From Octopus bimaculoides (lineage: Eukaryota), in contig NC_068994.1 in NCBI RefSeq assembly GCF_001194135.2, positions 41,044,814 through 41,108,813 on the forward strand: DNA of 64,000 bases. The letters are read 5' to 3'. A program made the position numbers and the translations under genes. Shown here in pieces: positions 14,827 through 14,986 of this stretch. The notes beneath the pieces were generated by a model, which had not been told where the DNA came from, searched no databases, and saw nothing but the letters and a program-made list of their open reading frames with translations. The first letter of the stretch is position 1. The number at the start of each line of letters is the position of its first letter.

Positions 14827-14986
14827 CTGGAAGTTCTTCATAGTATCCTGTGTCTCCCTCACTCCAGCCATGTCTACCATCAGCACAAGATACCGTAGAC
14901 ATTTCACTAGAGCGGTAAGGGGAATTAACTGCAGTTTTCCTATCTTTCAGACTGCCTGATATCCCAGCTGTCTTTTTAACACTCAT
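14827..14986 (-). CDS. Pcdh: Protocadherin cytoplasmic-tail exon (160 nt): MSVKKTAGISGSLKDRKTAVNSPYRSSEMSTVSCADGRHGWSEGDTGYYEELP(G)
   Basis: Translated by hand. The acceptor is ttttttgtaatggacAG|ATG (phase 0, matching the upstream donor) and the donor is CCAG|GTATGT (phase 1). The frame is open and ends in a motif resembling the D-S-G-x-G-W-S-E-x-D...Y-E-E-L-P tail I recall from cephalopod Pcdhs. Read-through of the donor gives GGT ATG TAA (stop 14821-14819). Confidence 0.85.

What the first reader, a model, noticed from the sequence alone, without database searches (positions are those of the whole stretch)
14827..14986. Hidden protocadherin tail exon 12.5 kb from the ectodomain exon, possibly a shared 'constant' exon
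Seen: a 160-nt exon absent from the ORF track, with a phase-0 acceptor that fits the phase-0 donor at 27537 and an open frame ending ADGRHGWSEGDTGYYEELP. Established: vertebrate clustered Pcdhs splice variable ectodomain exons to constant tail exons, and shared tail exons have been reported for some coleoid Pcdh arrays. Inference: any other phase-0 ectodomain exon beyond the right window edge could use this exon too. Only one variable exon is visible here, so sharing is not shown. The motif has GRHG where I recall DSGHG.
Basis: partly seen in the sequence, partly recalled or inferred. Interest (0 to 1): 0.72.

Follow-up and report, generated by a model that had tools for sequence, protein, structure and literature searches.

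The report
Octopus protocadherin's own second exon
The 160-base segment is a real coding exon, but it is the already-annotated, gene-specific second exon of one Octopus bimaculoides protocadherin gene and not a vertebrate-style "constant" exon shared by many genes.

Summary
Window 14986..14827 (minus strand) is a 160-nt exon with a phase-0 acceptor that joins the phase-0 donor at 27537. The spliced product is 100% identical to RefSeq XP_014783554.1 (Octopus bimaculoides "protocadherin beta-15 isoform X1", 939 aa).

It is not the last exon. It ends in a phase-1 GT donor, and an 83-aa terminal exon lies 19.1 kb further on, 4.3 kb beyond the left edge of the window.

The exon is strongly conserved. 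It is 94% identical in Argonauta hians with only in-frame indels, against about 60% identity in the flanking intron.

It encodes a module found across octopod protocadherins (consensus SEMSTxSSxxDSGHGWSExxTxHYE[ET]LP). Each paralogue carries its own diverged copy in its own locus: one ectodomain exon, one exon 2 and at most one exon 3 in all five loci examined. No two proteins of one species with clearly different ectodomains share an identical tail. Albertin et al. 2022 state explicitly that cephalopods do not splice first exons to shared final exons. Sharing is therefore not supported.

One addition: the exon is 3n+1 long. Skipping it (annotated isoform X2, 815 aa, in three Octopus species) shifts the frame of exon 3 and removes the whole conserved tail.

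Verdict: already known, low interest.

The parts
27537..29945 (-). Coding exon 1 of the protocadherin gene. It runs from the ATG at 29945 and encodes residues 1-803: signal peptide, six cadherin repeats, transmembrane helix and about 100 aa of juxtamembrane cytoplasmic sequence. It ends in the phase-0 donor CAG|GTAAAA.
   Evidence: Pfam Cadherin matches six stretches, E = 8e-74. 100% identical to P0001.
14987..27536 (-). Intron 1, 12,550 nt. It contains a 299-N assembly gap and microsatellites.
14987..15046 (-). Acceptor region of exon 2: polypyrimidine tract and ...GGACAG. This is the roughly 60-nt intronic stretch next to the exon that still aligns with Argonauta hians.
14827..14986 (-). Coding exon 2, the finding itself. 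It is 160 nt, with a phase-0 acceptor and a phase-1 donor, and encodes residues 804-856 plus the first base of codon 857. It carries the family module ...SEMSTVSCADGRHGWSEGDTGYYEELP. It behaves as a cassette exon: skipping it shifts the reading frame of exon 3.
14821..14826 (-). Donor GTATGT of intron 2. It is conserved in O. sinensis, in A. hians and in the paralogue P0002.
1..14820 (-). The proximal 14.8 kb of intron 2, which is 19,102 nt in total. The terminal coding exon 3 (83 aa, ...WNLPMRNSFTSYTKPLPAVPKLPYS*) lies outside the window, about 4.3 kb beyond position 1, at L001 44222-44472.

Best explanation
Window 14827-14986 (minus strand) is the second of three coding exons of a single, complete Octopus bimaculoides protocadherin gene (RefSeq XP_014783554.1/XP_014783555.1; CM046614.1 about 41.04-41.07 Mb). 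The gene is a member of the tandemly duplicated octopod protocadherin supercluster.

Shown: exon 1 (ectodomain, transmembrane helix and juxtamembrane region) splices from its phase-0 donor at 27537 to the phase-0 acceptor at 14986. Exon 2 ends in a phase-1 donor and splices 19.1 kb further on to a terminal exon outside the window. The exon belongs to this gene alone, and each paralogue has its own diverged copy.

Exon 2 encodes the first half of a disordered cytoplasmic tail confined to octopods. Its most conserved feature is the Y-E-[E/T]-[L/I]-P motif at the 3' end of the exon.

Inferred: that motif fits a tyrosine-based YxxPhi sorting signal or a pYEEL-type SH2 docking site, and the PLPAVPK motif of exon 3 fits an SH3 ligand. 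The long tail would therefore couple the adhesion receptor to trafficking or kinase signalling.

Shown at annotation level, with function inferred: exon 2 is 3n+1 nt long, so skipping it makes exon 3 read as MSIPANFNIFKM-stop. This yields an 815-aa receptor with an intact ectodomain but none of the conserved tail. The stop lies in the last coding exon found here, so the message should escape nonsense-mediated decay. This is a long-tail/short-tail switch comparable to the cytoplasmic isoforms of vertebrate delta- and alpha-protocadherins.
For: The spliced product is 100% identical at 100% coverage to P0001. The three exons were located in L001. In O. sinensis exon 2 is 159/160 identical. In A. 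hians it is 151/160 identical with +3 and +9 nt in-frame insertions and conserved AG and GTATGT sites, against 168/282 (60%) identity in the flanks. A profile that excludes this gene finds only this frame in the window, E = 5e-21. The exon-2 module was detected in 50 of 127 cephalopod protocadherins, all but one of them octopod, and the copies differ between paralogues; Y46/E46/[ET]46/[LI]45/P36 of 50 are conserved. The paralogue P0002 has its own exon 2 (142 nt, the same 0/1 phases) and its own exon 3 in its own 65-kb locus. All five loci show one ectodomain exon, one exon 2 and at most one exon 3. No identical tails occur on clearly different ectodomains within a species. Isoform X2 equals exon 1 joined to exon 3 in the shifted frame. 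Truncated isoforms ending at the same junction occur in two other genes (P0163, P0081). The tail has no Pfam match. AlphaFold2 predicts no secondary structure (pLDDT 58, pTM 0.12). The tail profile finds only 30 representatives among 1.84 billion proteins, and all ten whose names were looked up are octopod. The literature describes multi-exonic whole-gene duplicates with no shared final exons.
Against: No RNA reads were examined. The junctions rest on RefSeq Gnomon models, on orthologous models in three other species and on sequence conservation. The roles proposed for the motifs (YxxPhi/SH2, SH3) are pattern matches from general knowledge and were not tested. P0002 lacks the Tyr (RKEELP). The exon-skipped isoform could be splicing noise: its conservation among the three Octopus species says little, because O. 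bimaculoides and O. sinensis are about 97% identical at the DNA level around this exon (O. vulgaris DNA was not examined). Out-of-frame stops are also frequent in AT-rich DNA.
Confidence: 0.92

Rival explanations
1. One reading: the exon is a vertebrate-style constant exon that is also used by other phase-0 ectodomain exons lying upstream, beyond the right edge of the window.
For: Phase-0 donors at the end of exon 1 and phase-0 exon-2 acceptors occur in both genes checked at the DNA level, so cross-splicing would keep the frame. Introns of 12-34 kb are normal here. At least one other O. bimaculoides protocadherin gene model spans 135 kb and overlaps its neighbour's range.
Against: There is no second ectodomain exon within 34 kb upstream. 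Among the 120 best database relatives, only the orthologues (P0127, P0125) carry this peptide. All paralogues have their own diverged exon 2 and exon 3. No pair from one species with clearly different ectodomains has an identical tail. Published chromosome-scale analysis denies shared final exons in cephalopods.
Confidence: 0.03
2. Exon 2 is simply constitutive. The exon-skipped 815-aa 'isoform X2' is low-level mis-splicing or an annotation by-product with no function.
For: The splice sites of exon 2 are strong (polypyrimidine tract, CAG|GTATGT). The 12-aa shifted-frame peptide has no independent conservation signal. Its early stop is what an AT-rich sequence would give by chance.
Against: The same skipped product is annotated in O. 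bimaculoides and O. sinensis. It is also the only form on record for O. vulgaris, including a GenBank entry (QBA31119.1) that appears to come from a transcriptome study. Equivalent truncated isoforms exist for at least two other paralogues. The stop lies in the last coding exon found here, so the mRNA should be stable.
Confidence: 0.3
3. The open frame is a chance AG...GT-bounded ORF, or a gene-prediction artefact copied between related annotations.
For: A 53-codon open frame is not rare in itself. All supporting protein models are computational predictions.
Against: The exon is 94% identical to Argonauta hians with only in-frame indels, inside an otherwise unalignable intron, and both splice sites are conserved. 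A profile excluding this gene scores 71.8 bits. Homologous modules occur at the same position in 50 proteins.
Confidence: 0.01

Closest known systems
Octopod/coleoid expanded protocadherin genes (Albertin et al. 2015, 2022; Styfhals et al. 2019), specifically RefSeq XP_014783554.1 of O. bimaculoides and its 1:1 orthologues in O. sinensis (XP_029645512.1) and Argonauta hians (GAB1603907.1)
   Same: It is this gene. The protein is identical. The architecture is a large first exon plus small cytoplasmic exons, and the gene sits on the protocadherin-rich chromosome among paralogues lying 1.4-2.6 Mb away.
   Different: Nothing differs at the gene level. The papers read here list motifs for EC1, EC5, EC6, the transmembrane helix and a PP1 site, but not the exon-2/exon-3 tail motifs or the frameshifting cassette.
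Vertebrate clustered protocadherin (alpha/gamma) constant exons
   Same: A large variable-type exon encodes six cadherin repeats, the transmembrane helix and a short cytoplasmic stub, and ends in a donor. The rest of the cytoplasmic domain is encoded by small distal exons reached across long introns (for the vertebrate layout).
   Different: In vertebrates many first exons share one set of three constant exons. Here each first exon has its own diverged pair of tail exons. The tail also has no sequence similarity to any Pfam family, including the vertebrate constant region.
Cytoplasmic-tail splice isoforms of vertebrate delta-protocadherins and the alpha-protocadherin A/B/O isoforms
   Same: One ectodomain is paired with long or truncated cytoplasmic tails by alternative splicing of 3' exons (review PMC7339444). 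Here exon-2 inclusion gives 939 aa and skipping gives 815 aa.
   Different: The tails show no detectable sequence similarity. Published work found no CM1/CM2/CM3 motifs in octopus protocadherins. The mechanism here is a frameshift caused by skipping a 3n+1 exon.

Membership tests
Vertebrate-type clustered Pcdh constant (shared) exon | Several tandem variable first exons lie upstream of one set of tail exons | tested here: not met
   The 64-kb window holds one ectodomain exon and one exon-2 module, with none in the 34 kb upstream. The ratio is 1:1(:1) in all five loci.
Vertebrate-type clustered Pcdh constant (shared) exon | An identical tail peptide is found on proteins with different ectodomains in the same species | tested here: not met
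   Among 24 O. bimaculoides, 17 O. sinensis, 16 O. vulgaris and 34 A. hians proteins, no pair with clearly different ectodomains shares an identical exon-2/3 tail. The only long identical blocks lie inside exon 1 (EC6, transmembrane helix, juxtamembrane region) or between A. hians copies that are 90% identical.
Vertebrate-type clustered Pcdh constant (shared) exon | The tail is homologous to the vertebrate alpha/gamma constant region | tested here: not met
   The 226-aa cytoplasmic region has no Pfam match at E <= 10. The tail profile found only octopod proteins among the hits whose names were looked up.
Vertebrate-type clustered Pcdh constant (shared) exon | RNA junctions link multiple donors to the one acceptor | not testable with these tools
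   No RNA-seq mapping tool was available.
Octopod expanded protocadherin gene (multi-exonic whole-gene duplicate) | A large first exon encodes signal peptide, six cadherin repeats and transmembrane helix | tested here: met
   (six Cadherin stretches, E = 8e-74).
Octopod expanded protocadherin gene (multi-exonic whole-gene duplicate) | The gene has its own downstream cytoplasmic exons, diverged between paralogues | tested here: met
Octopod expanded protocadherin gene (multi-exonic whole-gene duplicate) | Identity to an annotated octopus protocadherin and location on the protocadherin-rich chromosome | tested here: met
   100% identical to XP_014783554.1 on CM046614.1. Paralogues lie at 39.6 and 43.7 Mb of the same record.
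Alternatively spliced cassette exon | Both the included and the skipped products are on record, and the skipped product is explained exactly by an exon1-exon3 junction | tested here: met
   P0001 against P0124/P0123/P0126. MSIPANFNIFKM-stop is exon 3 read in frame 0.
Alternatively spliced cassette exon | Regulated inclusion, varying by tissue or stage | not testable with these tools
   This needs RNA-seq quantification.

The most novel reading that the evidence does not exclude
Octopod protocadherins share a clade-restricted, disordered cytoplasmic module that the papers read here do not describe. It is split over two gene-specific exons. Exon 2 carries ...DSGHGWSE...YE[ET][LI]P. Exon 3 carries NDVIDLKS...WNLPxRNSFTSYxKPLPAVPK. 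The 3n+1 length of exon 2, with the same phases in the one paralogue checked, makes it a built-in on/off cassette for the entire signalling tail. A neuron could then express the same recognition ectodomain with or without intracellular coupling.
Probability: 0.3. Interest if true: 0.4.

Novelty: already known. Interest (0 to 1): 0.13.

Why it matters
The result is mainly a negative control for an attractive idea. Octopus protocadherin diversity at this locus comes from whole-gene duplication, with private tail exons, and not from vertebrate-style splicing to constant exons. This agrees with published chromosome-scale analyses. Two minor practical points follow. First, tail exons lie 12-34 kb from their ectodomain exon, and annotations of octopod genomes contain orphan 'tail-only' and fused multi-ectodomain models, so counts of protocadherin genes and isoforms should be read with care. 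Second, the conserved YE[ET]LP and PLPAVPK motifs and the frameshifting cassette give concrete handles for testing how cephalopod protocadherins signal, about which nothing is known.

Tried and rejected
(1) A tblastn search of the remaining 83 aa of P0001 against the window found nothing. Exon 3 is outside the window and was found in L001.

(2) A word-index protein search with the 136-aa tail alone returned only two short fragments and not even P0001. It could not serve as a test of sharing. I replaced it with inspection of the 120 best full-length hits and with the exhaustive profile search.

(3) Apparent 'shared tails' between P0061/P0064 and between P0087/P0093 turned out to be identical EC6-transmembrane-juxtamembrane blocks inside exon 1, with diverged distal tails. 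That is the opposite of a constant exon.

(4) P0023/P0048 in A. hians have an identical exon-2 peptide, but their ectodomains are 90% identical. They are recent duplicates or near-identical copies, not different variable exons.

(5) A Pfam scan of the cytoplasmic tail found no family.

(6) Albertin et al. 2015 is not held in the library. I relied on Albertin 2022, Styfhals 2019 and reviews.

(7) No gene with exactly the P0005 product is on record. The P0007 locus is too long to fetch.

(8) The 65-nt tandem repeat upstream of the gene has no further copies in the window or in the fetched loci.

Full report
**Observation.** On the minus strand the sequence reads ...tttttgtaatggacag|ATGAGTGTTAAA...GAAGAACTTCCAG|gtatgtaatg. 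The first exon base is 14986 and the last is 14827, giving 160 nt, which is 53 codons plus one base. The translation is MSVKKTAGISGSLKDRKTAVNSPYRSSEMSTVSCADGRHGWSEGDTGYYEELP.

The large open frame at 30098..27501 encodes a signal peptide, six cadherin repeats, a transmembrane helix and about 100 cytoplasmic residues. It runs into ...ACACAACAG|gtaaaa, so the donor after base 27537 is in phase 0. As a stop-to-stop ORF the small exon is only 55 aa, which explains its absence from an ORF track. The one thing it did not spell out is that the exon ends in a GT donor in phase 1, so it cannot be the end of the protein.

**Identity.** I joined exon 1 (from the ATG at 29945) to the 160-nt exon. The resulting 856-aa query is 100% identical over 100% of its length to P0001. 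P0001 is RefSeq XP_014783554.1/XP_014783555.1, 'protocadherin beta-15 isoform X1 [Octopus bimaculoides]', 939 aa. The window is therefore O. bimaculoides, record CM046614.1 at about 41,044,814-41,108,813. By accession order this is probably chromosome 14, the protocadherin chromosome of Albertin et al. 2022; that assignment is an inference.

The remaining 83 aa of P0001 are not in the window. In the fetched locus L001 the gene has three coding exons: 10001-12409, 24960-25119 and 44222-44472. In window terms, intron 1 is 12,550 nt and intron 2 is 19,102 nt. The terminal exon lies about 4.3 kb beyond window position 1. The exon is thus already annotated. It is internal and not terminal.

**Is it real?** Three independent lines say yes.
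- A profile HMM of the homologous segment was built from 47 paralogues, leaving out this gene and its two orthologues. Run against the six-frame translation of the window, it hits only 15007..14822 on the minus strand (71.8 bits, E = 5e-21). The next hit has E = 0.17.
- The orthologous loci of O. sinensis (L003) and Argonauta hians (L004) carry the same three-exon structure.
- Against A. hians the exon is 151/160 identical, with two insertions of 3 and 9 nt that keep the length at 3n+1. The ...GGACAG| acceptor and |GTATGTAA donor are conserved. The flanking intron is only 168/282 (60%) identical and stops aligning within 60-80 nt of the exon.

I could not examine RNA reads. The junction itself rests on the RefSeq/GenBank models of four species plus this conservation.

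**What it encodes.** An iterated profile search over the 127 cephalopod protocadherins retrieved found the exon-2 module in 50 of them, all but one of them octopod, always just after the end of exon 1. The consensus is roughly K-[DE]-x-E-x-M-V-x-x-P-x-x-F-S-E-M-S-T-x-S-S-x-x-D-S-G-H-G-W-S-E-x-x-T-x-H-Y-E-[ET]-[LI]-P.

The best-conserved positions are Y (46/50), E (46/50), E/T (46/50), L/I (45/50) and P (36/50), at the 3' end of the exon. DSGHGW is present in about 55-60% of copies.

Exon 3 carries a second conserved block, WNLPxRNSFTSYxKPLPAVPK. The whole cytoplasmic region has no Pfam match even at E <= 10. AlphaFold2 on the tail alignment gives no secondary structure (pLDDT 58, pTM 0.12).

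An exhaustive profile search of 1.84 billion representative proteins finds only 30 hits. All ten whose names were looked up are from Octopus or Argonauta. One cuttlefish protein shows a weak exon-2-like match (P0078).

The papers I could read list octopus-specific motifs only for EC1, EC5, EC6, the transmembrane helix and a PP1 site. They report no vertebrate CM1-3 motifs.

From general knowledge, YE[ET][LI] fits both a YxxPhi endocytic signal and a Src-family SH2 site (pYEEI-like), and PLPAVPK fits a PxxPxK SH3 ligand. These are pattern matches and remain untested.

**Shared constant exon?** No.
- The window has exactly one ectodomain exon and one exon-2 module. The 34 kb upstream of exon 1 contains no cadherin-coding sequence.
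- All five loci examined have one ectodomain exon, one exon 2 and at most one exon 3. They are this gene, its two orthologues, and the paralogues P0002 and P0064.
- P0002 lies 1.4 Mb away on the same chromosome. It has its own exon 2 (142 nt, the same phase-0 acceptor and phase-1 CCAG|GTATGT donor) and its own exon 3, with introns of 34 and 29 kb.
- The tails of paralogues are only about 26-40% identical to this one.
- Among the 120 best relatives of the full-length protein, only the orthologues carry this peptide. A different ectodomain joined to an identical 136-aa tail would have ranked near the top of that list.
- A systematic same-species comparison found no pair with clearly different ectodomains and an identical exon-2/3 tail. 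The two apparent exceptions are identical in the EC6-transmembrane-juxtamembrane part of exon 1 and diverge distally. That pattern points to gene conversion and not to a shared exon.
- Albertin et al. 2022 state that cephalopods do not splice multiple first exons to shared final exons and that their diversity arose by full gene duplication. I found no paper reporting shared tail exons in coleoids.

Only RNA-level cross-splicing remains formally open.

**An addition: a frameshifting cassette.** The 90%-identity cluster of P0001 also contains an 815-aa 'isoform X2' in O. bimaculoides (XP_014783556.1) and O. sinensis. The only O. vulgaris entries are likewise 815 aa, including QBA31119.1, which appears to derive from the transcriptome study of Styfhals et al..

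These proteins end ...DTSEMTQQ-MSIPANFNIFKM. That peptide is exon 3 read in frame 0 (ATG TCT ATT CCT GCA AAT TTC AAC ATC TTC AAA ATG TAG), which means exon 1 is spliced directly to exon 3. Because exon 2 is 3n+1 nt long, skipping it removes both conserved tail blocks. The stop lies in the last coding exon found here, so the message should not be a target of nonsense-mediated decay (inference).

Truncated isoforms ending 5-9 residues after the homologous exon-1 end are also on record for two other genes (P0163, P0081). Whether the skipping is regulated or noise cannot be decided here.

**Verdict.** The exon and the junction are correct but already annotated. 'Tail exon' should read 'internal cytoplasmic exon 2 of 3'. 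The constant-exon interpretation is not supported. Novelty: already known. The only mildly new points are the tail motifs, which the papers read here do not describe, and the frameshifting cassette.

Noticed in passing
Related proteins P0128, P0129, P0137, P0141, P0145, P0149; P0159, P0166: Octopod annotations contain 'tail-only' gene models of 110-220 aa that consist of exon-2/exon-3 modules. They also contain fused models with several ectodomains (6653 aa and 1785 aa). The long introns evidently cause protocadherin genes to be split or merged by annotation pipelines.
   Followed up: partly
O. bimaculoides CM046614.1, locus of P0007 (no DNA fetched): The gene model for P0007 spans 135 kb and overlaps the range of the next protocadherin gene on the same strand (830-aa product). 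The C-termini of P0007 and of the 830-aa protein P0015, which may be that neighbour's product, are not identical. This could be interleaved exons or a mis-joined model.
   Followed up: partly
Proteins P0061/P0064 (O. bimaculoides) and P0087/P0093 (A. hians): These paralogue pairs have ectodomains only 63-65% identical. They nevertheless share a near-identical block covering EC6, the transmembrane helix and the first ~60-70 cytoplasmic residues, all inside exon 1, and then diverge again. The pattern looks like gene conversion and is conserved between two genera.
   Followed up: partly
window 701-1568 and 33735-34595: Two inverted copies of an interspersed repeat of about 0.87 kb, 88.7% identical. 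One lies in intron 2 and the other upstream of the gene. Further repeat fragments at 60914-61453 match other parts of the locus.
   Followed up: no
window 12946-13244, 39926-40243, 58614-58781 (also 5403-5412, 34596-34605): Assembly gaps (runs of N) flanked by TA, CA or GA dinucleotide microsatellites. The long 'ORFs' listed there are artefacts of N-runs and simple repeats.
   Followed up: yes
window 30906-31103: A degenerate 65-nt tandem repeat of three copies, 72-75% identical and relatively GC-rich, about 1 kb upstream of the protocadherin start codon at 29945. No further copies were found in the window or in the fetched loci.
   Followed up: partly
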